This document shows, piece after piece, positions 34,627-62,600 of a stretch of 64,000 bases of DNA (positions within the stretch are counted from its first letter, which is position 1; each line of letters starts with the position of its first letter). The DNA lies in NCBI RefSeq assembly GCF_964204865.1, contig NC_135260.1, positions 9,796,001 through 9,860,000 of the forward strand, read 5' to 3'. A program made the translations under genes and the position numbers. A model generated the notes under the pieces. It saw nothing but the letters and a program-made list of their open reading frames with translations. It was not told where the DNA came from and did not search any database. This stretch comes from Styela clava (lineage: Eukaryota).

Positions 34627-35668
34627 GAGAAAAGGGCAGACGGGAAATAAAAAGGAACAAAATCACCACATAGTCCTTCCTCCGAGACAAATCATGGTTT
34701 TACGAGGGCTTCAACCCAAAACGGCAAAAAAAAATTCAAATCCAACTCCCATAATTTTTTTTTGAAATACTGGTAGAGCACATATTTCATTGTAATATTT
34801 TCAAATAAAGACGTTTTTGGATATTTCAACATTCGCCATTGACTTAAAACCCTCAAAATAATTCCTATAAATATAAACCAATCAATCTCAAAGATAATGG
34901 CTGTTGAATTCAAGAGGATGTAAGATATTGCAGCCAGTAGACACACTGCGCCAGGGAATTCATCAGGAAAATAAATACCTCATTTATAATGTGGATGTAC
35001 CTTTTATAAAATTTGTGACATGGTGAGTAATAACAGGATTCACCCTTGGTTCTAATTTGGTATAGTATGTCCTTTAATTTTTAGGGCTTAAACTTCAATA
35101 TTCACACCTGGAGATTTAATCATATGGCAGACCATGGCCTATCATGCGTTCATCAATTTAAGTCTGGTATTGGAATTAACCAATCAATTGCTCAATATGT
35201 ACGGAAAGAATACATACATACTTAACTACATTTTGACAAATGATAACCACAACACACAAAAGCTAACAAGGAATTCATATCACCAAGAAATGCCACATTA
35301 CATTATGAAAAACCATATAAATGCAATGTATGCTATAATTGTTCATTTGAAATCAGTTCTCGAAAAGGATATCCAAAGAATTTAGTTGGAAATTGGTAAA
35401 TCAGAATGTATTTACAAATAAAATGGGTTGTAAAATAGGGAGGGTATTCTCGTCTGCAAACGAATGTTTTTGGCATGGATGCTCATATAATTCATGTAGT
35501 CTTTCAGTTTCAGAAAATTTGCCATATTTTAGCGGAAGCAAGAACTTCTGTCAATATTTTGAAAAAGAAAAATTTAATAACATGATTTTGCTGGAAAATA
35601 GCTTAATTTAGATGATTCTTAATCAAAAAACAGAATTGCAGAATTATCATATGCAGATCTCATATACT

Positions 35669-38600
35669 TCATCTTCCATCTGGTTTGAAGAAAAATTCCA
35701 AGCCCAAACTCTCAATTTCATCAATATTTAGTGACTTTGCCTTTTTTCCAACAAAAAATCGTGGAAGAACTCTCATTTCTTGTTTTGATTTGAATCGCTG
35801 GCCAATATGCTGATCGACAATTTTGATCATAAGCTTCTTAAATGTAACTTTCCGTTTCTTCTCTGCATACTTTGTATACCCCTGGTCAAACGTTGCTAGG
35901 GCTTTTTTGTCCAGAACAGGAATACCTTGAAGTATAGTTAACAAAGAATTATGTGTGGGCCGTAGAGCTACATATACATAAAGGCTTAAGGCTAGCAATT
36001 GAGCTTGACAACCATCATGCTGTCCTTGACGTTGTAGGCCAAGAAGTACAGACTCAAATATAAATTTAGCAGCATCATCAGGCACTTCTTTCGTCTCAGT
36101 GAATGTATGTTTCAAAAGCCCCCATAAAAGATGAACGCCCTTATAAGCAGTTGCTGTGTCGTGCCAAGATATGGACATCAAACCAGTTGTTAGAAGCAAT
36201 TCAGCTATTTCGGTATGCATTAAAGATATTCCAATGGATGTAAGTTGACTTAAATTTGTTGTATTTTGTGTAATATTATTATCTTCTTGCATTTCGGTAT
36301 CAATGTTAGCGTCATTTTCCTCTTCTTTGGTATTTGATTTAGAATTTGGTTTCTTGTTGATGCACAAATTCACTAAAAGTTCAAGATATTCACGAGAAAC
36401 GATTCGTAAAAGCTGTTCCTTCAAGATTTCATCTTCTTCTTTTGTATCTTCATATTCTTGGCATTTATCAGACATAGACTCAATCACTTTTAGTCTTTCT
36501 TGTTCTTTGGTTCCATATTCCGTCCATTGGCACTGAAGCATTGAATTCATGAAATTGCAATATTTGTGAAGAATAGGTGCAACTACCTGATTAAGGTGTG
36601 ATTCAGGACACGATTTCATGAAATAATATAAGAACTGCCTTGTAAAAGAACGGATTCTTAATTCAGGCAATGTTTGAAAATCAGAAAATGATTTGGCTAA
36701 TATTTCCGGGAACAGATCAGCACTGCCATAGAATAGAACATTACAGCATTTTCCAACAGCGCCTAATATTTGATAACAATTTTCTAATACTATCAAAATA
36801 AATGTTTGCATCTTTTCCCAGGGTTCTTTTTCACGATTTTCATTTGGATCTTTAGTAATAGGATTAAATGAAACCATGGTCTTCCTTTCAGTCTCTCTGA
36901 TTAATAGACTTTTTGAATAATCGCTATGTACAATAGATTTTATACCAGCTGTCCAAAGTCCATGAAACATTTGCACTAAACTTGCAATATTGCCCATAAC
37001 TCCAATAACATGGGAAGCACAAGGGTGTAATACAACACCATTTTCATTCAAAAACCCACCGTTAGAAAGCGCTTTTGCATCCTCTGGAATTCGAGATCTG
37101 TTGATCATAGCCAGAGTGAGAGAAACACAGAAGCTAATATTGTTACGAAAATTACTAAATTGTTCATCTCTGTATTGTGATGAAGGTGAACTAAGTCCGA
37201 TAGCGGCAGCAAATTCAATTGGTGCAGTCATTCGAATATCATCCTTTGCAAGCCACATGTCATTTGCCAACGACATACCTTCTTGAATCAGAGCACTCTG
37301 TTGCTCAAACATGTTCCATTCACCACTAACAAGAACCATTGACTCATATACACATATTTTTTCCAAATGTGTGAGGCCATTTGGAATAGCAATTATTTCA
37401 CTCATTGCCTGTTGGAACTGTTCATATATTGTAATAACATGATCAGGATGATATTTACAAATATGTATTGTGGCAGACAGGCCATGTCGACGAAACTGAG
37501 ATACAACGGGTCCCCAGCGTTCAGGATGTGACATCGACATTTTTACCATAGCTGCATATTTGAAAACTATACTAATCAAAAATTTCTTTTTGTCATCAAA
37601 TATTTCTATGACTGGTAGAAAGCATCCTATAAGACTAATGAGGCATTGACAAAGGCATATATCTGTTATTTCACAGTTTATCAAATCCATAAGAAGGCTT
37701 TCCATTTTTGCAACTGGCATTGATTGAATCGTATCTTGCTTTTTTGAGAAAGTAATGGCAGTCTTCAAAACAATCTCGAGAATGTTTCTTATCGCATCCC
37801 ATCTGAGATAGGTAGGAGATTTTGATGTACATTGTTCTAATTTTGCACCATCTGAGCCCATTCCAGTTTCAATCGGCAAAGAGAGTTCGGCAGTCAAAGC
37901 TTCCAAAATAACATTGGCACAGTGGATGGGCATAACTCGTGTACAGCCACGAATAATTTGCAGAAGAGTGACACGATGGGAAAACACGAAAGCTTCAATT
38001 TCTTCATCATCATTGAAGTCTAACTGCGCAGGGAGAGACAAAGATGGAGCAACATCCTTTCTTATACCTTTAGCAGCCACTTCAAATAACTGTGGAACAT
38101 ATTTTACAAAAGTTTCATCCCTAGCTATACTACTGTTTTGCAGTAACTGATACCATGATCCACTTACTTCATAGGATAGAACAGGATTATCTTGACACAA
38201 AAAATCCATCAATAAGTCAAGGTATGCTGTATGAGAAGCTAAATTTGTAATTGTACTGTCTGATACTTCATCAGACCAGGATGAAACAATCTGCCCAGAA
38301 AGCAGTGAAAGAAAATTTCCCATTCGCTTGAGAAATAAATATTGTTCGTTTTCTTGTGAATGAGCAGCAGCATCGGTTATGGATGCTACTATAGTTTCTA
38401 TGTAAACTGGTGTTGAAAGGGTTAAGACATATTTTCTGTCTGATGCTTGTCCTTTGCGAAATACAGCCAATGCCAGGCACTCAACTGCCAATACTTGTAA
38501 TCCTCCTACATTTAGGAGTTTACAAAGTAGGCGAATGAGTAACCCTTCGTTTGCGAACACATGCTCCATATTAACCCATTCTAAATAACCCTGAAGTGTT

Positions 38601-39274
38601 TTTAAAGTGGATATTGATAAAGTTCTATACATGTCAAGTTCTTGCAGTTCCGTTGCATTAGCCTTTGTGTACAGTTGAATGTATATTGCTGAATTGCTTT
38701 CAAGTACGTCATAAAAAAATCTCATAATTTTTCCCATGCATAAGGAAAGACCATGTCGTATGTCTTGACTCCTATGGGAAGCTGACACAGTATGCAACAC
38801 TGCAACATCCTCTGCTATTCTGAGGAAAACCAGTTCAACTAGCTCGGTCTGAATTGGCCCAAGCTTCGCTAGATCAATTAAATCCTCAATCATGGATGGC
38901 CATTGTTGTGGCCATACATGCTTGATGATTTCAGCTAATGTATGAGCAATACCATCCTTTACATAGCTACTTTCATGCTGAAGACAGCTTTCCATTAAAA
39001 GCATAGCATTATTCTTAATTTGAATTTGTATTTCTTGACCAGTTTTTGTCCAACGGTTATGCACAAACTGTTGCATTAATTGCAAACCAAAGTGTTTAAT
39101 ATGGGGAGCAGCATCAGATTTAGACGCCAGAGCAAAACCAATTGAGCAAGCCATCTCGTTTTCTTTACATGCTTCACAAATACTATGAGCTGTCGCACGA
39201 TCGCCAGGTAGAGTATTCGGATTTAAAATGGCATCTACGGCGTTCACTATTTGTAGTAACATTTCGTCCTCCAT
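35669..39274 (-). CDS. XPO5: Exportin-5, single coding exon (about 1201 aa from the first ATG)
   Basis: Uninterrupted ORF with importin-beta N-terminal/Xpo1 motifs (KHFGLQL...HNRW, AEIIKHVWPQQWP, ELVFLRIAEDV) and the XPO5 C-terminus (LLGLQRQGQHDGCQAQLL). First ATG at 39274; the track's 39313 start is TTG. Confidence 0.93.
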   Translation of the reverse strand: MEDEMLLQIVNAVDAILNPNTLPGDRATAHSICEACKENEMACSIGFALASKSDAAPHIKHFGLQLMQQFVHNRWTKTGQEIQIQIKNNAMLLMESCLQHESSYVKDGIAHTLAEIIKHVWPQQWPSMIEDLIDLAKLGPIQTELVELVFLRIAEDVAVLHTVSASHRSQDIRHGLSLCMGKIMRFFYDVLESNSAIYIQLYTKANATELQELDMYRTLSISTLKTLQGYLEWVNMEHVFANEGLLIRLLCKLLNVGGLQVLAVECLALAVFRKGQASDRKYVLTLSTPVYIETIVASITDAAAHSQENEQYLFLKRMGNFLSLLSGQIVSSWSDEVSDSTITNLASHTAYLDLLMDFLCQDNPVLSYEVSGSWYQLLQNSSIARDETFVKYVPQLFEVAAKGIRKDVAPSLSLPAQLDFNDDEEIEAFVFSHRVTLLQIIRGCTRVMPIHCANVILEALTAELSLPIETGMGSDGAKLEQCTSKSPTYLRWDAIRNILEIVLKTAITFSKKQDTIQSMPVAKMESLLMDLINCEITDICLCQCLISLIGCFLPVIEIFDDKKKFLISIVFKYAAMVKMSMSHPERWGPVVSQFRRHGLSATIHICKYHPDHVITIYEQFQQAMSEIIAIPNGLTHLEKICVYESMVLVSGEWNMFEQQSALIQEGMSLANDMWLAKDDIRMTAPIEFAAAIGLSSPSSQYRDEQFSNFRNNISFCVSLTLAMINRSRIPEDAKALSNGGFLNENGVVLHPCASHVIGVMGNIASLVQMFHGLWTAGIKSIVHSDYSKSLLIRETERKTMVSFNPITKDPNENREKEPWEKMQTFILIVLENCYQILGAVGKCCNVLFYGSADLFPEILAKSFSDFQTLPELRIRSFTRQFLYYFMKSCPESHLNQVVAPILHKYCNFMNSMLQCQWTEYGTKEQERLKVIESMSDKCQEYEDTKEEDEILKEQLLRIVSREYLELLVNLCINKKPNSKSNTKEEENDANIDTEMQEDNNITQNTTNLSQLTSIGISLMHTEIAELLLTTGLMSISWHDTATAYKGVHLLWGLLKHTFTETKEVPDDAAKFIFESVLLGLQRQGQHDGCQAQLLALSLYVYVALRPTHNSLLTILQGIPVLDKKALATFDQGYTKYAEKKRKVTFKKLMIKIVDQHIGQRFKSKQEMRVLPRFFVGKKAKSLNIDEIESLGLEFFFKPDGR

Positions 39275-39353
39275 TTTTAGTTCATAAGAGTATGTAGCGT
39301 ACAAAAATGACAATTTTTTTAAATTATTTAAATAAGTGAGGTTAACTTAGTTA

Positions 39354-42300
39354 TTAGGATTGATCGGATTGATGCTTTCTAGCAATTTCTTGCTGCTTCT
39401 TCTCCCACAAACGCTGTCCGTCACAAAAACCAAGTTTGCCTTTGTTGAAAGAGTTTGGGCCTGATGAAGTTGGTGTGTTTCTGAAGATAAATTCAAAAAT
39501 GTTCTTTACAAGTCGATAAGAAACAGGAATAGGATATTCTTATTTATACTAACAAAGGCTAGGGAGCCAGAGTTGGAGCGAAGCTTATCATACAAGATGA
39601 CCATCGAGCCGAAGCTACCAGAAACTTTGTTGGCTCCAGTTCTGAAACATCTTTTTATTTTTCACATTTATTATTTTCTCATACCTCATACAAATAATGA
39701 AATCTGTCCTTATCAGCGTATAACTTTTTTGTAATTAATTACCAATATTAATTTAAAAATTTCAAGTTTAAATTATATAATCAAGTTAATTTACAATTTG
39801 AAACCATTTGGGTTGTTGTTTCGGGGTGAGTAGTCTACTGGTCAACACAAAAAATCTAATGACTATGCAGCCGGATCCCCAGTTTAAATATGATTAATAT
39901 AACTTTTAGGGAGTTAAACATCAGACAAATATACCTTCCAATGTTCTTCATTCGCATCTTAGCCTCTGGAGGAATCTCTTCTGGTTCACTCTACATCAGA
40001 AACAAGAAATACATAACATTCTGCGACAAATGACTATAAATGTATGTATGAATATTGTGGAAATATTAGACTTCTAGGAATGCAATAATAACTACTTGGT
40101 ATCTATAAATGGAATGATTTTATTGTCAATGAAAAAGACGAGCAGAAAATGAAAACGGCTACAAAAATTTTATGCGCAAGTAAACAGAACACTTTGGCAA
40201 TGATCCATGGCGAACAACAGGGAATAACACCTCTATACTACACAAAATTACTTTACATTCAAGTTTATCTCAGTAAGTAAATAAAATATCGATATTGAGA
40301 TATTTCATTTTTTCTTTGAAATTTGAATTTTTTCTCTCTGAATTGAACAATTGGAGGATCTTTAACGAAAAGCCAACACAAATTGACAAACATATAAGAA
40401 GACTCAAGTCAAGAAATTTTATTTTTTAGTTTCTTTCAAAAATGGTTGTCTGAATATATCATGTAACCGCTTTGCTTTTAACCCCCCTAAACCAGGCAAT
40501 AAAGCTAAATCATGTTCTGTAGCTTTTGCAACATTGCTCAAATTTTTATAGTTTGATAATAAAGTGTGTGCATCAGTGGAATTAACAGATTTAACGGATG
40601 ATAAAGTCTCGGCAAGTCTTGCTGTGAATTCTTTCTTTATTTTGGTTTGAATCAAGTCCGCAGGTTTATTCCTATACGCTTTGAAAGTTTCTAAATACGT
40701 CCCAGCTTCTTCGTTACTAAATGCCAGCAAAAGTGTCATTTCCGATACTAATGCAGCTTTCGCAAGTTCCTTAACTGCATGAGCAGGCTCTTTGACATCA
40801 ACGAGCCCCAGAAGCACTCTAATGGAGAACTGACCAGATTTCCGCAATGCTTGAATACGGTCGTATATATAATTTGGTTTTAAAGCATGATATCGAAGAC
40901 TTAGGAATAAACAACAAGACGTGGCACTCATAATGTAATCAGGTACCATTCCGGCATCTTTGTCCGCATATTGCCAAGGAACATTACATATGTTATCCAA
41001 AACGGGATTACCACGCTGACATGGGTTAACCATAATAGCATTGCCAGATCCTAGAGCAAAAGTTCGAGTGCTCCCTCCACTTGGAAGACAAGCCTTATAT
41101 TCAGCTTCAGCATCTTTTTGTAAGAATGCAAACGCACTTGTAAATGAGACGGTTCCAGATGGGCCTGCTATATCTTCAATTGCCACCTTTTCTGTGCTTG
41201 ATTTTGTACTTGAATTACCATTCTCATTAGATTGCAGATCTTTCCCATGGGCCGAGTTGAGAAACTCTCCTAATATTTTATCATTTTCATCTGATTCATA
41301 ATCAGCCATTTTCAATCAATAAATCTCAATTACTAATAAAGATAACTAGGTCAATGAAGAAAAGTTCGTCAGTTAAGCCCGAATAACGAGTCCAGTTGAT
41401 ATAATAATTTTGGTTAAATTGGAGTTCAAACGATGAAGATTATGGGTATGAGTGAAGAAATATAAACAATATTGATATTGTAACTAGCTCCAAATAGATT
41501 AGAAAAAATCATTCTTGGATGCCAATTTTGCCAGATATTTAGAAATATGTTTACAACAAACCAGGCCATATGCAACCAAAGGTAATTTTTAAGTATGCCA
41601 TCGCCAACTTACTACATAGGCAAGATATACTGGTATACAAGTGATAACAAATACAACAATACTATACAAGGTCAAACTATACATATAGTAATAAATTATT
41701 ATCTAAGATATAAAACAATAAAACTGGCAAACCTTTCTACAAACATAACAAAGAGAAAAGCTGAACGAAAAAGTTTAGTTTAGATATGGAAAGTAGCTGC
41801 CCATTACATGATTCCAAATGGAAACTGCAAATGACTAGTATTAACAGAGTATAAAAAATATCATTAACCTTTTTATTCCCTAGCACTGATTTCAAATTTA
41901 TTTCAGTAAAATGTATCCATTAAAATCCTACAACCCTTTCGAAATTTGAGGGATCTAATAGGGCAATGCAACAGTGTCAACTTATGTCAGATCATATTAA
42001 CCCTTTCATTATGTCAACTGCTAGAGTACCAGAAATAGGCATGTCCCTCTTATCGATAGACAGTGTGTTAGCTAACTTGAAAATACTGTAAGTTTAAGAG
42101 ACGACCATTACACTAGAATCCCCACAAAATTGCATTAAAATGGATAACTTAAGAATGATGGTAAGACCGGATTTCTGATTCAGATCAAGACCGAAATTCT
42201 GAGTGTTGTTTCTGGTTCAGACCTTAGAAATTTACATTTGCATGATTCTCAGATCAGACCAACTAGGCATGGTTCCCACGGTACACGGGACCTGTTGGTG

Positions 42301-44365
42301 ATATATTACGAATTGATTGGGGGAGACTGGGGCATGTGAGGATGAATCAAAGTACAAAATTTCAACTTTACAAATAGTACAATAAAGACAATTGAAAACT
42401 TCTTCTAGGCTATCCCGTATTTTAAGTTTAAAAAAGGGGTAACGAATTCTCCAGTTTAGCAGGGTAATTCGAAAGTGGAAGGGTTAATAGATCATTTGAT
42501 GACAATAAATTGTATGTATTTAGTAAATTACTTACATCACTGTCTTCATTAAACACAGCTGCAACCTTACTAGATTTCTTCACGACAGTTGGTTCTGTCT
42601 TTGTTTTGTCCTTCTGTAATTTTCAGAGACATTTTGTAATTTTGGCCACAAAACGCTAGTATTATTTATTTCAAAATCTCATTTATCAAATATCTAATTG
42701 AGTTATACACGAACAGCAAGCTCGAAACCCCTTTTATATCTACCACAATAGGCCAAACAAATAGACCCCATAAATTCCAGTATTAGTAAAAATGAATTCA
42801 TTATTATATCGTATAAGAATACTGCTAATCATGAAGGGATTCTGTTTATAGTTAAATTTCTATTATAGCATTGGTTATCAATATTGGTAATCGTACAAAA
42901 TTCCCAACCATGATTTTCACTCACTGCCAGTTTTAAAGCAATGGGGTTGAGATTTTTTTTCATGGCACCAGGCTTCAATATCTTTGTAGTTGTGGCAGGC
43001 TTCTTGTTTGATGTAGAAGACTTAATATTGAACCCAATGGAAGGCTTCTTTGATGGAATAGTTTCGGATGAGGTCTCTGTAGATGGTCTTTTGTAAGAAG
43101 ATGCCTCTGTTAGAACAAGTCAAAACTTCCCAAGATGAGAATGCATGCCTAATTTCAAGCAATAAAATCAAAAAATTGTCAACAAAGTCAACGAGGATAA
43201 GCATGATTGATAAAATTAGCTCCATAAACTGACAAGCCATTCCACATCAATATGAAATAAGTCTACAAACTTGGTATTTTCATTAAATTATAACTTTTTA
43301 CCAATATCTATAAATGATACTTTCATATTTCTACAGGATATATTACGGTATTATGTAATATTTTGATGTACAACAGATGAAATGGCGTAACAGTATGGGA
43401 TTCATGACATGAAGTAACATAGAGTGTATTGTGTCACCTCTTTTACTCTTATTAACAATATCATTGAACTAATGTACAAAAGAATATTTATTTGAGAGTT
43501 TAAAAATTGAACAGGTGGAAATTGTCAGATTTATATATACTAGATCCATTTGAGTATAGAAAACACAGCATTTTAATACATGTGAAACATATAACGAGAG
43601 TAAAGAAAGTTTTGCAATAATATTAAACTCGTGTAGTTTCGTACCTAACAAACTTCTAGTGGGCGAAGCATAACAATTTTTTGACATGTCAATCCTAATC
43701 CCCACCCGACTACGGCATCCAAAAATTACGTCACAATCACGTCATAGAGCTTGCCAAATACACGCACGATCGCCCGAAATGGCATCAGCGCCGACGATAA
43801 AGAACTGACTAACGTCAGCGATCTCTCTCATATTGGGATCGTTGCGACAAGAAAACGAGAGAAATAGCTGTTCGATTTCTTGTCTGCGCGTCTTGGGTGA
43901 CAGTTCGTATAGTTTGAAGGGCTCTATTACATCACTGTGACGTTGTAGTGACGTAATTTTTGGATGGCGTAGTCAGGTGGGGGTTAGGATTGAAACATGA
44001 AAAAATTGTTATGCCAGCCCTCTAGAAGTACGTTAGGTACGAAACTACACGAGACCCAAAATTACCTCAAACATAAAGCTGTAAAGCCAGAAAAGACATT
44101 TCAATCTAAAACATGGCCTAAAATGCATACAAACATATGATGATACAAAATAACAATACGGCAATGAAAGCATACAGAGGTAAGGTACGTGAGGCAGTGT
44201 TTTCTAAAAACATATTTCTATTGAAGCTCAAAAGCTGTATCGGTATCGGTAGGTACCTATTGTGAGGTAACGTTAGGTCAATTTAGCAATTATGCGCCAA
44301 ATACTATCACAGAGACGCGATAACCAAATTTTATACTCACCATCCCTGCGATACGTGTCTGCCAT
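39354..44365 (-). CDS. PCNP: PEST proteolytic signal-containing nuclear protein, 5 coding exons
   Basis: Exons 44365-44341, 43106-42925, 42613-42536, 39990-39935, 39480-39354 in phase; peptides [56 protein letters not shown] match the PCNP C-terminus. Confidence 0.93.
40419..41309 (-). CDS. ERCC1: DNA excision repair protein ERCC1, intronless, nested in PCNP intron 3
   Basis: [11 protein letters not shown]...VPWQY...PDY...LFLSLRYH central domain and C-terminal HhH2 ([10 protein letters not shown]...[16 protein letters not shown]). ATG at 41309; the track's 41315 start is TTG. Confidence 0.95.
   Translation of the reverse strand: MADYESDENDKILGEFLNSAHGKDLQSNENGNSSTKSSTEKVAIEDIAGPSGTVSFTSAFAFLQKDAEAEYKACLPSGGSTRTFALGSGNAIMVNPCQRGNPVLDNICNVPWQYADKDAGMVPDYIMSATSCCLFLSLRYHALKPNYIYDRIQALRKSGQFSIRVLLGLVDVKEPAHAVKELAKAALVSEMTLLLAFSNEEAGTYLETFKAYRNKPADLIQTKIKKEFTARLAETLSSVKSVNSTDAHTLLSNYKNLSNVAKATEHDLALLPGLGGLKAKRLHDIFRQPFLKETKK
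43628..44057. mobile_element. Palindromic MITE family A (PCNP intron 1)
   Basis: Imperfect TIRs over 100 bp long (ctcgtgtagtttcgtacctaac... / ...gttaggtacgaaactacacgagaccc); the left terminal GGGT is missing. Confidence 0.8.
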
Positions 44366-45137: not shown

Positions 45138-45777
45138 TCCGTAATGTAAAAAATTTGATTCCTAATGGGAAAATAGAAAAATGGTCAAATGAATTGTGCA
45201 AGAACTTGGATAATTAGTTGACGCAGTATGAAAAAGTGTTTTATTGCACTATTAAATCGCGACTTAGATCTTTCCATGTCAAATTTTCTCTGAGAGCAGT
45301 GCCTACAAATGACCTGTTATTTAGAATAAATAAGACATCAAGTCCAAAATGTACATTTTGTGAGAGTCATGTCGAAACAGTGTTACATTTATTTTATTTC
45401 TGTTAATTTGTGCAACACTTTTGGGAAATAGTGAATGCATAGCTAACTGTTGAATATGGGTTAAATCTTGATCTGACATATGAAGAAATTTGATTTTGGC
45501 CTTTGGGTAGGGCAAAACCAAGGTATAAACTGTGTTTTACTAAGTGCAAGATATTATATTTATAAATGTAAATTACGTAATGAGAGGCCTCAATTTGATC
45601 AATTTTTATATATGATAAAAAGTATTTTCAACTGTGAAAAAATTATTGCAACTAAAAAATGTAAACTGTCGAATCATGTAAAAAAGGGGAAAATTATCAT
45701 GAACTCATTTTTTTAAGTGCAATTGTAATTATATGTTATCGTGTGTATAAAAAGTGATGTTTTTAATAATAAAAAAA
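45138..45777 (+). mobile_element. 5'-truncated L1/Tx1-type LINE (C-terminal CCHC zf-RVT region)
   Basis: Peptide RAVPTNDLLFRI...PKCTFCESHVETVLHLFYFC...ARYYIYKCK with stops; AATAAA plus A-tail; 13-bp TSD AACTATCCTAGGC at 45125-45137 and 45778-45790. Confidence 0.85.
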
Positions 45778-48832: not shown

Positions 48833-51800
48833 TTACATCCACTGTGATTCGTCAGTGAAGTCACCCAATGGTTGCTGAGCAATGGGCTGATTACCCCACA
48901 TGTTTTGAGAATTTTGACCCCCCTCAGTCTGCCTTCGTTTTCCACCGACACCATCGCCATTGAAGTTAGCCTTACGTTTGCCACCTAGATTTGGTTTTCC
49001 ACGGGCTCCTCCGCGGCCGCCCCTGACCCCCTGCCCACCGCGACCACGGGCCATGAAGTTCATTGGGCCACCCATGCCCATACCCATGCTGATCGGTGCA
49101 GAAGAAAAGAAAAAATGAATGATTTAAATTTTGATAATCGAATTGAAAAAAATTTCAAATTTTTCAGACTATGTTTAAATTTTTTTTTATCACATATCAT
49201 GACAAAGCCCCTGTAATAAATAGATATTTTTCCAAACTGTTCGGCATCATGCTCGTACATCACATTCGAACACTTAACTTTTTGAGGAAATATTAGATTT
49301 TTATTACTTTTAGGGACAATTAATTGGGTGTCTGGAACGATATTCTAGCCCATAACAATATAATAACTGTCTATTACAATAATAATATGACTTGCTCACC
49401 TGCCTCTGTATCCTCTCATCATCATATTTCCGCGTCCTCGAAAGCCAGGTCCACCCATTCCCATTCCACCAAAATACGGGTCATCGTAGCCTCCGCCAAA
49501 ACCACTTCCGAAGCCCATGTAATCGTAATAATCATCGACGAATCCGCCACTGTTGTACGGCATCGGTGGAAAACCCATTGGGCCCATATGTCCACCACGT
49601 GGTCCTCTTCCGCGCTGCCCTCTTTGATTGAACTGCCCGGGTATGCCCATGCTGCAATAGCATAAGGACAGAGTTAAAAATGAATTTTTGCATTGCCGAA
49701 AAATAAAAATGCTTCTCTACGTACTGCTGATTCATTTTTCGTTCCATTTGTCTTTCCTTCTTTTTTTTATCAACTGGTTTTGCAAGGCTGATTTCAATTG
49801 GTTCACCTTCCAGATTCAGACCGTTCAGCTCTTGCATTGCCTGTAAATGAAGTAAATATTGGAACAGAATACAGTAGTACTTCTTCAGACACTGTTCTAC
49901 TTATAGAGATCGATAAAAGAAAAGCAGAACCTTACCTTCAAAGCCTGCTCTCTATCTTTAAAATGCACGAAAGCGTAGTCCTTGATTTTTTTCACTCTTT
50001 CAATTTCGCCATATGAACTAAATGTTGTCTGGATTACTTCTTCGGAAGCTTTGGTCGCCAAATTTTTCAGGTACAGAACCTTTACCTGTAAAAAATAACG
50101 TAAAGGTTGATTAGCTAGGTTACACAACTGCAAAGACCCCAAACTTAAATTTCATGAAAAGTGTTGACGGGGCTAAGTTCCGACATCTTAAACTCTTGCA
50201 GCCATTTAACGATAACTGTCTAAACGAAACGAGTCCTGACTCAATGAGACCTAACTGAGTGAGTGACTCGACCATACTTCTCATCAAAAGGTGTAAAAAA
50301 TTAGGTTGGGCTGATGACCAATGACGAGCAGCTATGAGTTTAGGGACTTTTACCCAACACCGAGAACGATAAATACCAATAATATATAGGTATATATATA
50401 TACCTTTGACATGACTTCATCAGATGGATTATCGATCGGATCAGCCCAGTCCACCGACACAAGATTATTCCAAACTTTTGTTTTTCCCGATCCAAGTTTT
50501 CGCCGTGCTTGCGATGCAGACTTGTGATCAGTGTATTCAAGGAAGCAGAATCCTCGGTTTTTCGACTTGTCCTCGGTTTGATGATAAACAATGACATCTT
50601 TTAGACAAGCTGCAACAAAAATGTTTTACATTACTTCAAAATAAGATTAAATAATGTCTGTCTCTGGTCACGGATGTCTGCAGATGAAATAAATTTGGCA
50701 TTGGCAATAACTGAATTATCAGAAATCAATAAATTGTTACAGTTTAGACTGAAAGATGCAGAAGGGGTGGGTGCCTCATGTATACTTACTTATTCAGTAA
50801 TCAGCATCTTACAGTTATATCACAATTTATAAACAAATTTATTTGCTATGTATATGACCACCTCAGATCTGTTGAGCTTATAAGTAGGTTTCATCACATA
50901 TAAATATGACGGGGAAAGAAGTATTCTCATCACTGGTGGTAAATCAATCAAAATAGTAAAAACAAATAATATTAAAAATGAGGGCAAAACAATCTTACGT
51001 GATAAACTCTGGAACTCTTCAAAAATTTCATCTTTTGTTTTATTTTTAGGTATTGAACCGATAAACAGGCGACAATTTGATTGTGACAGGCAGACGCCAA
51101 GAAATTTTTTCGGTTTTATTTCGTAATTGTCCAGCTGTGAAACCAGAATGCATTGTTTAAATGAGTAAAAATCTGTTTGACCTAATCTGGCTCAGTGGCA
51201 CTTCCAATAAAGCTTTCTCAATCAAAATCTCAGAGATGAACTTGTGATGACAATGTATTTTTTTTTATATATATTTCAGTAATCTAACCAATTTCACGGA
51301 TTCCACTGCCATGTCTCTCTGTACGAATGACGCGAAACCGTAGCCTCTATTTTGCCCTGATAATGGTTCCATCATTAGTCTGAAATCCCATATTGTACCG
51401 GCTTTTTCCAGAAGTGGTATGATTTCATCTTCAAAGACATCTCTTGGAATTCGACCAATGAATACCTGTTATATAGGATACAAACATAATAATACAAAAC
51501 TGAAACATTGGAAATAGAATTTGCATACTTATCCTGGGAAAGAGGAAAGACTGCTTGTATGGTATCTCATTTCGTTACTTGTGCATTTCGGGGACGGGAA
51601 TAGATAACCAGTTACTTGATTCAGATACATGGGCTTATTATTAATGGAGGAGTAACCAATCAGGAGTCATGTGAACTATCCTACGAAACTTCTCACATAT
51701 ACATTCAAACTCGAGATTCTCTGCAGGATAATCAGAGGTGTGATGGCACACATGTTCCTAACACCTAGCTTAATCTGCCAAACACCTGAGAGTTATTGAA

Positions 51801-53411
51801 GAACAAACAGGTAAGAAAAATACTTGAAACCCTGGTCCTGGCTGTGAATACTCAAATAAACCAAGATGCTCATTTCAAAACTTCATTTTTTATACATTGT
51901 CAGTTCACCACCTCAGATCTGTTGAGCTAGTAGTTGTATCATCATGTATTAATATGACGGGGAAAGAAGTATTTTCATCATCGGTGGTGAACCAAATCAC
52001 AATGTAAAACCAATTTATTTTTGAATAAAACCAGACAGACAATGTGATTATACGAAATTTTACTTTTAGATCCACTCTTACTTTACACAATGATATTCGA
52101 ATAAATACCTGGCAGCCTGGTCCTGGCTCTTCACCATCATAAACTTCTGTGGGTGGTGGTCCACCATATCTTCGTTGACCTGTGGTTACATCTAAGGAGT
52201 ACTTTGTTCTATCCAGAAGAGCCTACAACGAATGTAAAAATGGATTTCATGAAAATATACAAAATAATTATCAGAAAATTATCAATTGCTCAGTCCAATT
52301 AGTAATTTAGTGAAGTACAAAGAAAAAGTTATGTAGGACAGAATTTTAAAATTTTTTCCCCAAAATAACTTCTATATTGCGTACTTGAATATCGTCTTCA
52401 TTAGGCCCAACTTTTTGGCTGAGATTGGTTCTTCCATCTTTTTCTGCCTTGAGTCTCTGTCGGTAGATTTTCATTACACCGCAAAGAAAGGCACTTTTGT
52501 TCTGGACATGCTGTAAAATTAGAAACATACGATTATAATTCGCTCAGTGCTATGCAATATTACAATTTATTTTACAACTAAATCTAATTGCACAAGACTA
52601 AGAGATATTGTGAAATATGAGCTTTACCCCATTGCTTTTTTTACCTGAAGATTAGAATCTTTAAACTGCTTTAAAACAGCGATAGCTCCATCCTCTTCGA
52701 GCTCTTTTAATGCCTCAATCGCTCTTTCATCTAATTCACTGTATTGGACTAGACCTACAACAGAAGTTGCAAATGATTAATTATTTAAAAGCAATGGAAA
52801 AGTCACCAATTGGAATATGAGATTAGAATGTCACGTGGCAAGGTTTTCTTCGGTTTAGAGATTAGTTTGATTATAAATACCCAAATTCGTTCAACACATT
52901 TGTAACATGAAATTACCTCAATATTCAAGTTGTAAGTCGCATATTTTTAAAGTATCGCGATTTGGATGTATACATATATAATGAATTTAAATCCATTTTA
53001 ACACTCGAAGACCAATTCATTTCCCCGACCAGTGAGTTTCAAAAGTTTAAATATTGTCAGTTCACCACCTCAGATCTGTTGAGCTTGTAGTTGTATCATC
53101 ATGTATTAATATGACGGGGAAAGAAGTATTTTCATCATCGGTGGTGAATCAAATCACAACGTAAACCATAGAAAGTAGAAATGATATATTTTCAAATCCA
53201 AACAAACAACCATTGTGATAAGGAAATCTACTGTTAGATCCACTCTTACTTTACACAATGATAATCGAATAACAAACGTTATACCTTCTACAAAAATCGC
53301 ATCTAGAGCTCCGGCAACTTTTTCCGTGCAGCCAGCTTCTATTAGACTTTGATAATGTTCTGATTTCATAACTTCATCTTCATTCTCAATTTTGGCCACA
53401 ACGTCTGTCAT
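48833..53411 (-). CDS. SYNCRIP: hnRNP R/Q (SYNCRIP-like): acidic N-domain, three RRMs, RGG tail
   Basis: Exons 53411-53285, 52754-52645, 52510-52385, 52222-52109, 51465-51289, 51134-50999, 50609-50404, 50085-49936, 49840-49725, 49651-49400, 49088-48833. Peptides HVQNKSAFLCGVMK, LDVTTGQRRYGGPPP, KNRGFCFLEY, RVKKIKDYAFVHF, WGNQPIAQQPL. Probably co-orthologous to HNRNPR and SYNCRIP. Confidence 0.93.
50857..50940 (-). ncRNA. Intronic box C/D snoRNA, SNORD12/snR190-like, copy 1
   Basis: ACCACC/GGTGGT-type terminal stem, C box GTGATGA, guide CTTCTTTCCCCG, D' CATA, C' GTGATGA, guide AAGCTCAACAG, D box CTGA; same strand as the host gene. Confidence 0.88.
51511..51785 (-). mobile_element. SINE family C copy in an hnRNP intron
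   Basis: Shared blocks ttatcctggg, ccagttacttgattcagat and taatcagaggtgtgatgg. Confidence 0.6.
51903..51992 (-). ncRNA. Intronic box C/D snoRNA, SNORD12/snR190-like, copy 2
   Basis: 10-bp terminal stem GTTCACCACC/GGTGGTGAAC, C box ATGATGA, the same two guides, D box CTGA. Confidence 0.9.
53061..53148 (-). ncRNA. Intronic box C/D snoRNA, SNORD12/snR190-like, copy 3
   Basis: 9-bp terminal stem, C box ATGATGA, guides CTTCTTTCCCCG and CAAGCTCAACAG, D box CTGA. Confidence 0.9.
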
Positions 53412-59684: not shown

Positions 59685-62600
59685 CAGTGGCGGCGCGTCA
59701 ATAGGGCCAACCGGGGCAATGCTCCGGTTGTTTTTTCGGTATAAAAAAAAATATTCGAAAAATACCTCAATATCGGTTGCACAGACTGTCTACACTAGCC
59801 ATATTCTCCCGACATGGTTCATTTTTCGCTCGCAAAGCCTTCGCCGAACGTCGACGGGGCGACGCCGATTTTGCCCCGGTTGCTTATTGTATATCGTATT
59901 CTCTCTTTTATCTTCCACTCGCCGCGTTTGTCTCGTTTGTTTTCTGTTTCTTTTACTAAATCATCGGGGCCGATCGGGGCTAGCCACGAAATTATGACGA
60001 CACAATGCCGACGTTTCTTACAACAACGTGTTGACATATTCACGCATTCCTTCTCGTTCGTTGGTTGCTTGAAGAGTTGATAGTTTCCTCGCCTTCGTTT
60101 TTGTCGCTTGTTTCGCTATTTGAATCAGTTAGAGACCTTTAGTCCATTTGCTTTCGATTTTCCACATTCTTTTTGAGCTCCTCACTTCTTTCCGGCTTCG
60201 CATTTCTTAGCCTTAGACCTCATAATGAATAAGGTTGGTGCACTACTTTGCACTCCGTTTTCGCAGCTGCCGCTGGAACAAAAATTAGAGGTACAACGTC
60301 TTGGGCCTTATCAACCAAAAAATTGTTCACTGGAACAATCCCATGACGGAGGAAAGCGTCGGCGTACATTCTGCACAGAAACTTGGTATAAAAAACACGA
60401 ATGGTTGTGTTACAGCGAGGACAAAAATGCACTTTTTTGTTTTTATTGCCTACTTTTTGCTACCGCCCGTGACTCACATTGGTGTAAATTTGGTTTTAGA
60501 GATCTTAAACATCTTTCCGAGCGTGCCAGGGATCATCAATCTTCTATGGAGCATCTGGACAATGCAGTAAAATACCGAACATTCGGAAATGTTAATATTG
60601 CAGCACAGTTGGATGAAGGACGCGCGGTTTCTATTCGTCGGCACAACCAAAACGTCGAGAAAAACCGCCATGTTCTCGATCGATTGATAGATGTTTTGAA
60701 GTTCATTGGTTGTCACGAGCTGTCCTTCCGTGGGCACGATGAACGGGCTGGCTCTTCTAATAGAGGGGTATTTTTGGATATGGCGGAATACACCGCATCC
60801 CTAGATACAGTATTGAGAGATCATCTTGATGCCGCAACTGTTTCGAAAGGGACATCTAAGGATATCCAAAATGATTTGCTCGACTCAATGTATAAAATTT
60901 ATTTACAACATTTGGCTCTGGAAATTGAGAATTGCCAGTTCCTTTCGATTCAGTCTGACGAGACAACTGACATCACGTGCGTTTCCCAACTGGCTGTAAT
61001 TTTTCGGTTTGTGAAAGATGGTAAACCTACCGAGAGATTTCACAGCTTTGTACCAATCGTTGATTGCACGGCTTGCGGGATATCGGCTGTACTGGAAAAA
61101 GTGTTACAGCCTTACAACGCGAAGTCAAAATTGATAGCTCAAACTTATGACGGCGCGGCAGTCATGTGTGGGTCGAAACATGGTGTTCAAGTTTATATAA
61201 AAGAAGATTTTCCTCATGCGCATTTCTTACATTGTTATGCACACCAATTTAACCTCGTTATTAAAAATATGTGTCTTGATACCCCTCTCGTCCGTATATT
61301 TTTTGCAAATGTTTCGGGGTTTTCTTCATTTTTTTCCGTTTCGCCGAAGCGCTCTGACCTTCTTCGCCAGATATGTAGCCGCCGTCTCCCAGCTTGTGCA
61401 CCAACACGTTGGAATTTCCAATCACGCGTGGTGCAGGGCGTGTCCGAAATTAGGTCTGAGCTCATTGAGTGTTTCAATGGCATTCAGAGCTCTCCGGTTT
61501 GGGACGAACGCTCTGTGAGGGAGGCGGCAGGTCTAAAGCGTCTGCTAGAAGATGGTGAGTTTTCATTTTTTCTCGCTTTTTTCTCCACAATATTCTATCA
61601 CGTGGATGTATTATACGGCGCATTGCAGTCAAGGCTAATGGATGGAGCGTCTGTGCAGTCGTGTATTTCAGACTTCTGCGATGCTGTATCTCGTATCCGG
61701 GAAACAATAAAATACGACGACACATGGAGTGCTTCTTTACGCCGCGGGCAAACAACGCAGCGTTTGATTTTGTCTGCAAAGGAATGCTGTGACATTCTGG
61801 TGAATCAAATAGGCGATTGTCTGCGCACTGAACACCTTGCCGCGTTCTCTTTGATGGACCCCAAAAAATTTTCAAAATTTGCACGTCAATTTCTCATCCA
61901 TTTGTTGGCTACTGTCTCCAAATTTTACCCCATGATAAACGTGGGTAAATTGGAAAATGAATTGCGATGTATATACACCAATCAAACTTTTTTGAACATC
62001 ACATCAACTTGCGCGCTCTATGGGGTCCTCATAGATAACACTCTAGTAACTACCTTTGCGGCGTCTGCAAAATTTCTGGACATCATTTTGACGACGCCTA
62101 TTTCTTCCGCCGACGCAGAGCGAACATTTAGCACGCTGAAGCGTATTAAAACGTATCTCAGAAACACAATGAAGCAAGATAGATTAAATTCCTTGGCTGT
62201 TTTATCCATTCACAGAGACGTTATTTCTGGGATGCATGACTTTAATCAGCGCGTTATTGAGCATTTTGCTTCCAAGAAACCGCGGCGTGTTGCATATATG
62301 TTCAAGCAGTAGAAGTCTAGCAGCATATATATCTATGAGTGAGCGACGCATGTCCTTATCTTTGCATTAACTTTCCTTTCTTCATAGTAACGTTTTAAAC
62401 CTTATTTTAGGTTTTGTCTGCTTTCCCGAAGTTTCTGTTAATATGTCATTGTATTTATCTGGGTAAATATTGCCTTTCCTTTTGAAAGAGGTTTCAAAAT
62501 AAACTATGTCTATATTTATTAATCCATTGACTTGGACCGGTTTTAAAGACACTTTCTTATCGTTAAAAATTGTCGCTTTTGCCGATTGGTTGTTACCGAT

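What the first reader, a model, noticed from the sequence alone, without database searches (positions are those of the whole stretch)
35669..44365. Three genes in one apparent transcription unit: PCNP hosts intronless ERCC1 and is followed immediately by intronless XPO5
Seen: PCNP, ERCC1 and XPO5 are all on the minus strand. ERCC1 lies wholly inside PCNP intron 3, and the XPO5 ATG (39274) is 79 nt after the PCNP stop (39354) with no AATAAA and little room for a promoter. Both passengers are single-exon while the neighbours CCDC81 and hnRNP R/Q are intron-rich. Established: vertebrate ERCC1 and XPO5 are multi-exon, and ascidians resolve operons by SL trans-splicing. Inference: two retroposed essential housekeeping genes (nucleotide excision repair, pre-miRNA export) were captured by the PCNP transcript to form a nested operon.
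Basis: partly seen in the sequence, partly recalled or inferred. Interest (0 to 1): 0.85.

Follow-up and report, generated by a model that had tools for sequence, protein, structure and literature searches.

The report
Ascidian PCNP–ERCC1–XPO5 gene nest
In this sea-squirt genome an intronless DNA-repair gene (ERCC1) sits inside an intron of the PCNP gene and an intronless exportin-5 gene starts 79 bases after PCNP ends; the layout is real and its ERCC1-in-PCNP part is also seen in Ciona (about 390 million years old if this species is a stolidobranch), but it fits the already known sea-squirt operon pattern and shared transcription could not be tested.

Summary
On the minus strand there is a full-length intronless XPO5 (35669-39274, 1201 aa) and an intronless ERCC1 (40419-41309, 296 aa). 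A five-exon PCNP gene has its exons 3 and 4 either side of ERCC1, and its stop lies 79 nt before the XPO5 ATG. Both intronless genes are single-copy in the 377 Mb genome.

New here: the PCNP-hosts-ERCC1 nest is also present in Ciona intestinalis. A database entry there joins PCNP exons 1-3 directly to the ERCC1 start. It is probably present in Clavelina lepadiformis too (consecutive RefSeq accessions, same chromosome). So it is old, not a recent capture.

PCNP-XPO5 meets the published working definition of a Ciona operon: same strand, under 100 bp apart, no AATAAA. Operons holding many single-exon genes are already known to cover about 20% of Ciona genes.

The only AG in the spacer is a poor acceptor. 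ERCC1 has 1.2 kb of upstream intron and its own AATAAA, so it may simply be a nested gene. No retroposition hallmarks remain.

Verdict: a real locus and a new member of a known kind, of modest interest. The scan noted other candidate operons elsewhere in this genome.

The parts
35669..39274 (-). XPO5 (exportin-5) coding sequence, a single exon of 1201 aa plus stop
   Evidence: ORF. Pfam Exportin-5 4e-75, Xpo1, IBN_N. Single copy in the genome.
35573..35578 (-). ATTAAA, the likely XPO5 poly(A) signal, about 90 nt after the stop
   Evidence: Pattern scan and sequence. No RNA confirmation.
39275..39353 (-). 79-nt spacer between the PCNP stop and the XPO5 ATG. It has no AATAAA or ATTAAA. It contains TATA-like TATTTAAATA (from 39334), Inr-like TCATTTT (A at 39308) and a 2-codon uORF (ATG 39285).
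   Evidence: The motifs are my own reading and may be chance in AT-rich DNA.
39346..39347 (-). The only AG in the spacer, in the context CTAAG with A at -3, 8 nt after the PCNP stop. It is the only possible Ciona-type trans-splice acceptor between the two coding regions.
   Evidence: All four PCNP cis-acceptors have C or T at -3.
39354..39480 (-). PCNP exon 5 (last exon, includes stop TAA 39356-39354)
   Evidence: Pfam PCNP positions 122-151, E 2.9e-14. Homologues.
39935..39990 (-). PCNP exon 4. Its donor GTATAT is the only weak donor of the gene.
   Evidence: Pfam PCNP positions 103-121, E 5.3e-9. Donor sequences.
39991..42535 (-). PCNP intron 3, which hosts the whole ERCC1 gene
   Evidence: Follows from the exon 3 and exon 4 boundaries.
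40119..40124 (-). AATAAA about 300 nt after the ERCC1 stop and 129 nt before PCNP exon 4; the likely ERCC1 poly(A) signal
40419..41309 (-). ERCC1 coding sequence, a single exon of 296 aa plus stop
   Evidence: ORF. Rad10 5.5e-41 plus HhH. Single copy.
41333..41334 (-). Best candidate splice acceptor upstream of ERCC1 (TTATCTTTATTAG|TAATTG), 23 nt before the ATG. Joining it to PCNP exon 3 would give an immediate TAA stop.
   Evidence: By analogy with the Ciona model P0391, whose acceptor lies 3 nt before the ERCC1 ATG. Not confirmed by RNA.
42536..42613 (-). PCNP exon 3 (ends ...AAVFNEDSD, donor GTAAGT)
   Evidence: 30 of 46 PCNP homologues hit it, best E 9e-5. The Ciona P0391 N-terminus hits it at E 6e-4.
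42925..43106 (-). PCNP exon 2
   Evidence: Homologues align colinearly, best E 1.2e-4. No Pfam hit on its own.
44341..44365 (-). PCNP exon 1 (ATG 44365, MADTYRRD, donor GTGAGT)
   Evidence: Reading only. Too short to test.

Best explanation
This is an old, conserved ascidian gene nest, not a recent capture. ERCC1, intronless and single-copy, sits in intron 3 of PCNP. The same arrangement exists in Ciona intestinalis and probably in Clavelina lepadiformis. XPO5, also intronless and single-copy, starts 79 nt after the PCNP stop. The most likely working (inferred, not shown) is as follows. PCNP and XPO5 form a Ciona-type dicistronic operon. RNA polymerase II starts at the PCNP promoter, which has 4.4 kb of its own upstream spacer, and reads through into XPO5. 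The XPO5 mRNA gets its capped 5' end by spliced-leader trans-splicing, either at the lone AG 8 nt after the PCNP stop or at the acceptor of PCNP exon 5. PCNP 3'-end formation competes with this, and there is no canonical AAUAAA. XPO5 ends at its own ATTAAA. ERCC1 is most simply a nested gene: its mRNA starts at a splice acceptor just upstream of the ATG, probably by SL addition, and ends at its own AATAAA inside the intron. Its precursor may come from a promoter in the 1.2 kb of intron upstream or from the PCNP transcript. The intronless state of both genes reflects an ancient reverse-transcriptase-mediated loss of all introns. Whether that was retroposition with loss of the parent or cDNA conversion in place can no longer be told.
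For: Structure. Single copy. Conservation: Ciona entry P0391 (357 aa) consists of PCNP residues 1-90, one residue, then the whole ERCC1. Its N-terminus matches Clavelina PCNP at E 3e-16 and the rest is identical to Ciona ERCC1 XP_026694956.1. Clavelina ERCC1 is XP_076818539.1 and Clavelina PCNP is XP_076818540.1, both on one 20,453,238-bp contig. Operon fit: the genes are on the same strand, 79 nt lie between the coding regions, and the spacer has no AATAAA or ATTAAA. Ciona operons are defined as same-strand pairs under 100 bp apart, and 72% of their downstream genes have SL-ESTs (PMC2760879). 16 of 18 characterised junctions lack AATAAA and have no intercistronic DNA (PMC1488885). 38% of operon genes are single-exon, against 15% elsewhere. 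PCNP heads the unit: hnRNP R/Q ends about 4.4 kb upstream with a LINE fragment in between. ERCC1 and XPO5 have their own AATAAA and ATTAAA. The exon-4 donor GTATAT is weak, and in Ciona weak paired donors go with trans-splicing at the acceptor (PMC11155486).
Against: The only AG in the spacer is a poor acceptor (AAG, 55% pyrimidines) and would leave PCNP an 8-nt 3' UTR. The stricter Ciona definition (zero distance plus an annotated acceptor) keeps only 1404 of the earlier 2909 operon genes, so about half of the under-100-bp pairs may not be operons. In Ciona the single-exon excess is strongest in the 5'-most gene, whereas here the single-exon gene is downstream. TATA-like and Inr-like motifs in the spacer allow an independent core promoter. 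ATG depletion upstream of XPO5 and ERCC1 is not significant (P 0.11-0.82). XPO5-PCNP adjacency in other ascidians could not be checked. I did not find the SL RNA gene of this species.
Confidence: 0.5

Rival explanations
1. The three genes are tightly packed but independently transcribed. XPO5 has its own core promoter overlapping the PCNP 3' end, either in the spacer or in PCNP intron 4. ERCC1 has a promoter in the 1.2 kb of intron 3 upstream of it. Either gene may still be SL trans-spliced, as most ascidian genes are, but no polycistronic precursor is needed. The nest is conserved simply because a gene inside an intron is hard to move without breaking its host.
For: TATA-like TATTTAAATA at 39334 with Inr-like TCATTTT 26 nt downstream, and TATAAATA in intron 4 (reading). 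There is 1.2 kb of intron upstream of ERCC1. Both genes have their own poly(A) signals. The spacer AG is a poor acceptor. About half of Ciona's under-100-bp pairs fail the stricter operon definition. About 79% of non-operon Ciona genes are trans-spliced anyway.
Against: The motifs are expected by chance in 65% AT DNA. PCNP would still need to end its mRNA within or across the XPO5 promoter or 5' UTR without any AATAAA or ATTAAA. A 79-nt gap between coding regions is the signature used to find ascidian operons, most of which were confirmed by SL-ESTs.
Confidence: 0.35
2. One reading: a three-cistron 'nested operon'. All three mRNAs derive from PCNP-promoter transcripts. ERCC1 is cut out of intron 3 by SL trans-splicing plus intronic polyadenylation, in competition with PCNP splicing, and both passengers arrived as retrocopies captured by the PCNP transcript.
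For: There is a good acceptor candidate 23 nt before the ERCC1 ATG. A Ciona gene model uses the PCNP exon-3 donor with an acceptor 3 nt before the ERCC1 ATG, so host transcripts can be processed onto the ERCC1 exon. Trans-splicing in Ciona can occur at an acceptor that has a paired donor. Both passengers are intronless.
Against: The PCNP exon-3 donor is a strong GTAAGT, which favours cis-splicing. In this window the cis-join gives an immediate stop, so no fusion protein is made. There are no retroposition hallmarks and no parent copies. The nest is shared with Ciona, so 'capture' cannot be dated or shown. There is no RNA data.
Confidence: 0.12
3. ERCC1 and/or XPO5 in this window are dead retrocopies, and the working genes lie elsewhere.
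For: Only that they lack introns.
Against: Each is the only copy in the 377 Mb assembly. Both frames are intact over 296 and 1201 codons with all family domains present. Relatives carry full-length orthologues at 87% and 81% identity.
Confidence: 0.02

Closest known systems
Ciona intestinalis SL-resolved operons (Satou et al. 2006 NAR, PMC1488885; Satou et al. 2008 Genome Biol, PMC2760879)
   Same: The genes are on the same strand and under 100 bp apart. The upstream cistron has no canonical AATAAA at its end. A single-exon gene is involved. The host is an ascidian in which SL trans-splicing is general.
   Different: Here the single-exon gene is the downstream one, whereas in Ciona the excess is strongest in 5'-most genes. 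The one AG available between the coding regions is a poor acceptor. The upstream gene also hosts another gene in an intron. None of the RNA-level criteria (SL-EST at the junction, poly(A) site abutting the acceptor, dicistronic cDNA) could be tested.
The Ciona intestinalis PCNP/ERCC1 locus, as seen in UniParc UPI000521C2A1 (P0391) and XP_026694956.1 (P0010)
   Same: PCNP exons 1-3 end at the same ...AAVFNEDSD boundary and lie upstream of ERCC1 on the same strand. A splice acceptor sits just before the ERCC1 ATG.
   Different: In Ciona the join is in frame (...NEDSD-I-MDDDSD...), giving a predicted PCNP-ERCC1 fusion protein. In this window every candidate join runs into a stop within 0-9 codons. 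I could not see the Ciona DNA, so the exon count of Ciona ERCC1 and the position of Ciona XPO5 are unknown. The fusion may be a prediction artefact.
Caenorhabditis SL1-type operons without intercistronic sequence (as discussed in PMC1488885)
   Same: Upstream 3'-end formation and downstream trans-splicing use the same site, so one precursor can give either mRNA but not both.
   Different: The three characterised nematode cases keep AATAAA. This is a different phylum and probably an independent origin.
Nested intronic genes and retrogenes of animals in general
   Same: An intronless gene lies wholly inside an intron of a host gene on the same strand, with its own poly(A) signal.
   Different: There is no parent copy, no poly(A) tail remnant and no target-site duplication. 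The gene is the organism's only ERCC1, and the nest is conserved across ascidian orders.

Membership tests
Ciona-type SL-resolved operon | Neighbouring genes on the same strand, less than 100 bp apart | tested here: met
   79 nt lie between the PCNP stop and the XPO5 ATG, both on the minus strand. The definition is from PMC2760879.
Ciona-type SL-resolved operon | The 5' end of the downstream mRNA is a spliced-leader acceptor site | not testable with these tools
From sequence alone, the only spacer AG is a poor AAG.
Ciona-type SL-resolved operon | The upstream mRNA poly(A) site abuts the acceptor (no intercistronic DNA) | not testable with these tools
   This needs 3'-end reads.
Ciona-type SL-resolved operon | No canonical AATAAA near the end of the upstream cistron (16 of 18 Ciona cases) | tested here: met
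   There is no AATAAA or ATTAAA on the minus strand from the PCNP stop through the spacer; the next ATTAAA downstream (39100) lies inside XPO5 coding sequence, and the nearest upstream AATAAA (39659) is in intron 4. The Ciona figure is from PMC1488885.
Ciona-type SL-resolved operon | A polycistronic precursor transcript exists | not testable with these tools
   No reads were available.
Nested (intronic) gene | The whole gene lies between two exons of a host gene | tested here: met
   ERCC1 (41309-40419) lies between PCNP exon 3 (42613-42536) and exon 4 (39990-39935). The exons are supported.
Retrogene (retroposed copy) | Lacks the introns of its orthologues | tested here: met
   Both genes are single uninterrupted ORFs. 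That vertebrate ERCC1 and XPO5 are multi-exon is from my own knowledge and was not tested here.
Retrogene (retroposed copy) | An intron-bearing parent copy elsewhere in the genome | tested here: not met
   The six-frame search of the whole assembly finds only the window copies.
Retrogene (retroposed copy) | A poly(A) remnant at the 3' end and flanking target-site duplications | tested here: not met
   There is no A-run of 8 or more after either gene and no flanking direct repeats. Decay is expected if the event is ancient, so this does not exclude it.
ERCC1/Rad10 | Rad10 central domain plus C-terminal helix-hairpin-helix | tested here: met
   Rad10 5.5e-41 and HHH_5 5.5e-6. It groups with tunicate ERCC1 at 100/100 support.
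Exportin-5 | IBN_N, Xpo1 and Exportin-5 domains over the full length | tested here: met
   It shows 29% identity over 99% of its length to named animal exportin-5.
PCNP | Match to Pfam PF15473 across the spliced exons | tested here: met
   Exons 4 and 5 cover profile positions 103-151, abutting at the splice junction. Exons 2-3 are supported by homologue alignment. The joined model was not submitted to any search.

The most novel reading that the evidence does not exclude
One promoter would serve three essential housekeeping genes through mutually exclusive RNA-processing choices. A PCNP-promoter transcript would take one of three fates. It could be SL trans-spliced and polyadenylated inside intron 3 to give ERCC1 mRNA. 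It could be fully cis-spliced and cleaved to give PCNP mRNA. Or it could be trans-spliced at or near the last PCNP exon to give XPO5 mRNA. On this reading, that coupling is what has kept the nest intact since the split from Ciona, about 390 million years ago if this species is a stolidobranch. This would be an operon with a cistron inside an intron of another cistron, a layout not described in the Ciona operon papers I read.
Probability: 0.15. Interest if true: 0.6.

Novelty: new member of a known kind. Interest (0 to 1): 0.3.

Why it matters
If the operon reading is right, nucleotide-excision repair (ERCC1) and pre-miRNA export (XPO5) in this animal depend on the promoter and RNA processing of an unrelated small nuclear protein gene. 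The conserved nest would then be a handy natural case for studying how ascidians choose between cis-splicing, trans-splicing and polyadenylation on one precursor. The finding also gives a concrete cross-species marker, ERCC1 inside PCNP intron 3, in a group whose gene order otherwise changes fast. If the genes are independently transcribed, the locus is just an example of compact gene packing.

Tried and rejected
I retried neither.

2. SL RNA gene. A search of the genome with the Ciona leader plus GT found a roughly 90-copy array on C3 at 24.85-24.96 Mb. It turned out to be tandem tRNA genes with an upstream element containing ATTTGCAT and no GT donor, so it is not an SL gene. The SL of this species remains unidentified.

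3. Synteny from metagenome contigs. The one informative contig, L010 (identical to P0016, inside the tunicate ERCC1 clade), has an intronless ERCC1. It shows no PCNP exon or XPO5 within 4.3 kb upstream or 1.6 kb downstream. Its flanks are repeats and its species is unknown, so this is uninformative rather than negative.

4. Contig-length matching. I looked for relatives' PCNP on the same contigs as their XPO5 or ERCC1. Only Clavelina matched.

5. ATG depletion of the putative 5' leaders was not significant.

6. Target-site duplications and poly(A) remnants: none found.

7. A literature search for Ciona gene IDs of XPO5 found nothing useful. PMC2860165 is not held.

8. The joined (spliced) PCNP protein was not submitted to any search.

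9. The pseudogene reading was rejected.


Full report
**What is there.** The window is G000:C14:9796001-9860000 of a 377 Mb assembly. The minus strand carries two long uninterrupted reading frames.
- The first runs from ATG 39274 to its stop at 35671-35669 and encodes 1201 aa. It matches the Pfam families Exportin-5 (4e-75), Xpo1 and IBN_N over its whole length.
- The second runs from ATG 41309 to its stop at 40421-40419 and encodes 296 aa. It matches Rad10/ERCC1 (5.5e-41) plus a C-terminal helix-hairpin-helix.
- The nearest named ERCC1 proteins are from Phallusia (57%), Ciona (56%) and Clavelina (49%). Unnamed relatives reach 87%.
- In a tree, the window's ERCC1 lies in a 100/100-supported clade with all named tunicate sequences, but outside the Ciona, Phallusia and Clavelina rows.
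- The organism is therefore an ascidian, probably a stolidobranch. That last step is an inference.

**The PCNP gene.** Reading, I place five exons on the minus strand: 44365-44341, 43106-42925, 42613-42536, 39990-39935 and 39480-39354.
- Three donors are GTGAGT or GTAAGT and one is GTATAT. The acceptors are CAG, CAG, TAG and CAG.
- Exon 4 matches Pfam PCNP positions 103-121 (E 5e-9). Exon 5 matches positions 122-151 (E 3e-14). The two matches abut exactly at the splice junction.
- I fetched PCNP proteins using exon 5 as the query. They align colinearly on exons 2 to 5. For example, the Clavelina protein P0198 places residues 64-90 on exon 3, 91-109 on exon 4 and 107-151 on exon 5. Exon 2 reaches E 1e-4.
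- Exon 1 is too short to test.
- I did not send the joined protein to any search. Exons were searched one by one, by reference.
- ERCC1 therefore lies wholly inside PCNP intron 3, 1.2 kb after exon 3 and 0.43 kb before exon 4. The PCNP stop (39356-39354) is 79 nt from the XPO5 ATG.

**Limits of the unit.**
- Upstream, an hnRNP R/Q-like gene on the same strand ends near 48833 (RRM exon, snoRNAs in its introns). That is 4.4 kb before the PCNP ATG, with a LINE fragment in between. PCNP therefore has room for its own promoter and would head any unit.
- Downstream of XPO5, the next coding-like ORFs are on the plus strand. I could not confirm that they are CCDC81.

**Copies and retroposition.**
- A six-frame search of the whole assembly finds only the window copies of ERCC1 and XPO5. 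No intron-bearing parent exists.
- No poly(A) remnant follows either gene, and no direct repeats flank them.
- Total loss of introns, which number about 30 in XPO5 of other animals by my own knowledge, points to a reverse-transcriptase-mediated event. Retroposition with loss of the parent cannot be told apart from cDNA conversion in place.
- ERCC1 is also a single 301-aa ORF on a genomic metagenome contig that falls inside the tunicate clade (L010). Full-length XPO5 relatives sit on 14.6 kb and 15.7 kb contigs. The intronless state is therefore probably widespread in the group.

**Conservation, the main new result.**
- The Ciona ERCC1 cluster contains a 357-aa entry, P0391 (UniParc UPI000521C2A1).
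- Its first 90 residues match Clavelina PCNP (E 3e-16) and vertebrate PCNP (E 7e-10). They end in ...[10 protein letters not shown], the same boundary as exon 3 in this window.
- One residue later the complete ERCC1 begins at its own Met, identical to XP_026694956.1.
- Real transcript or gene-prediction product, this model requires that in Ciona the PCNP exons 1-3 lie upstream of ERCC1 on the same strand. It also requires a usable acceptor 3 nt before the ERCC1 ATG.
- In Clavelina lepadiformis, ERCC1 is XP_076818539.1 and PCNP is XP_076818540.1, on the same 20,453,238-bp contig. Consecutive RefSeq numbers usually mean neighbouring genes. That rule is from my own knowledge, so this is suggestive rather than proven.
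- Stolidobranchs split from the Ciona/Clavelina side about 389 +/- 32 Mya (PMC5899321), and tunicate genome organisation diverges rapidly (PMC5753386).
- The nest is therefore ancient. This argues against a recent 'capture'.
- A gene inside an intron is also hard to move without damaging its host, so conservation alone does not prove shared transcription.

**Does it work as one transcription unit?** Published Ciona work sets the frame.
- Operons were defined as same-strand pairs under 100 bp apart. There were 1310 of them, holding 2909 genes, and 72% of the downstream genes had SL-ESTs. 38% of operon genes are single-exon, against 15% elsewhere (PMC2760879).
- Characterised junctions have no intercistronic DNA. 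The upstream mRNA ends at the acceptor AG, and 16 of 18 lack AATAAA (PMC1488885).
- A later, stricter definition keeps only 1404 operon genes. About 79% of non-operon genes are trans-spliced anyway, and trans-splicing can use an acceptor that has a paired, weak donor (PMC11155486).

PCNP-XPO5 meets the distance and strand criterion and the no-AATAAA criterion. Several points weigh against the operon reading:
- The spacer has a single AG (39347-39346) in the context CTAAG, with A at -3. All four real PCNP acceptors have C or T there. Using it would leave PCNP an 8-nt 3' UTR.
- One alternative is trans-splicing at the exon-5 acceptor, whose paired donor is the one weak donor of the gene. ATG depletion of that putative leader is not significant (P 0.15).
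- Another alternative is an independent core promoter. The spacer holds TATTTAAATA and, 26 nt later, TCATTTT. Such motifs are expected by chance in 65% AT DNA.

For ERCC1:
- There is a good acceptor candidate at 41334-41333 (TTATCTTTATTAG|), 23 nt before the ATG.
- There is 1.2 kb of intron upstream that could hold a promoter.
- Joining PCNP exon 3 to any of the candidate acceptors in this window runs into a stop within 0-9 codons. The Ciona-style fusion protein is therefore not encoded here.

**Odds.** No RNA data could be obtained, so the mechanism stays inferred. My estimates:

| Reading | Probability |
|---|---|
| PCNP-XPO5 is a Ciona-type operon, with ERCC1 a nested gene of uncertain promoter | about 0.5 |
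| Three independently transcribed, tightly packed genes | about 0.35 |
| Full three-cistron nested operon with captured retrocopies | about 0.12 |
| Dead retrocopies | about 0.02 |

**Novelty.** Operons rich in single-exon genes are an established feature of about one fifth of Ciona genes, so the kind is known. What is new is this particular locus and the finding that ERCC1-inside-PCNP is shared across ascidian orders. The scan's first readers also noted two other candidate operons elsewhere in this genome, which I did not check. I rate interest as modest, at 0.3.

Noticed in passing
window 43628-44053: A MITE-like element of about 426 bp lies in PCNP intron 1. It has nested inverted arms (43628-43747 and 43935-44053) that are 86-92% complementary.
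   Followed up: partly
window 60225-62312 (+): An intact 695-aa ORF encodes a hAT-family transposase (DUF4371 2e-18, hAT dimerisation domain 1e-9). It lies in a stretch of raised GC content (41-43%). A 124-aa ORF of unknown family sits 228 nt upstream.
   Followed up: partly
window 45218-45716 (+): A fragment of a non-LTR retrotransposon (zf-RVT, E 1e-7) lies in the spacer between hnRNP R/Q and PCNP.
   Followed up: partly
window 51904-51991 and 53061-53148 (-): Two SNORD12/SNORD106-family C/D snoRNAs score above the Rfam gathering threshold inside introns of the hnRNP R/Q-like gene.
   Followed up: no
G000:C3:24847563-24961794 (L009 = C3:24906500-24909500): A tandem array of about 90 units (spacings of roughly 0.5-1.8 kb) each carries a tRNA-like gene. 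About 40 nt upstream is ATTCTATTTGCATAAG, which resembles the Ciona spliced leader at 15 of 16 bases. It contains the octamer ATTTGCAT and pairs with a downstream AAATAGAAT. It has no GT donor, so it is not an SL gene.
   Followed up: partly
window 35669-39274 (XPO5 protein): XPO5 diverges unusually fast in this lineage. Identity is 81% to the closest relative, 41-45% to the next group, and then 29% to all other animals. ERCC1 from apparently the same relatives keeps 87%, 73% and 63-65%.
   Followed up: no
Ciona intestinalis entries P0391 and P0389 (no window coordinates): Two older Ciona protein entries fuse PCNP N-terminal sequence to ERCC1. P0391 is joined in frame just before the ERCC1 Met. 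P0389 is joined into the middle of ERCC1. At least the second looks like a prediction artefact.
   Followed up: partly
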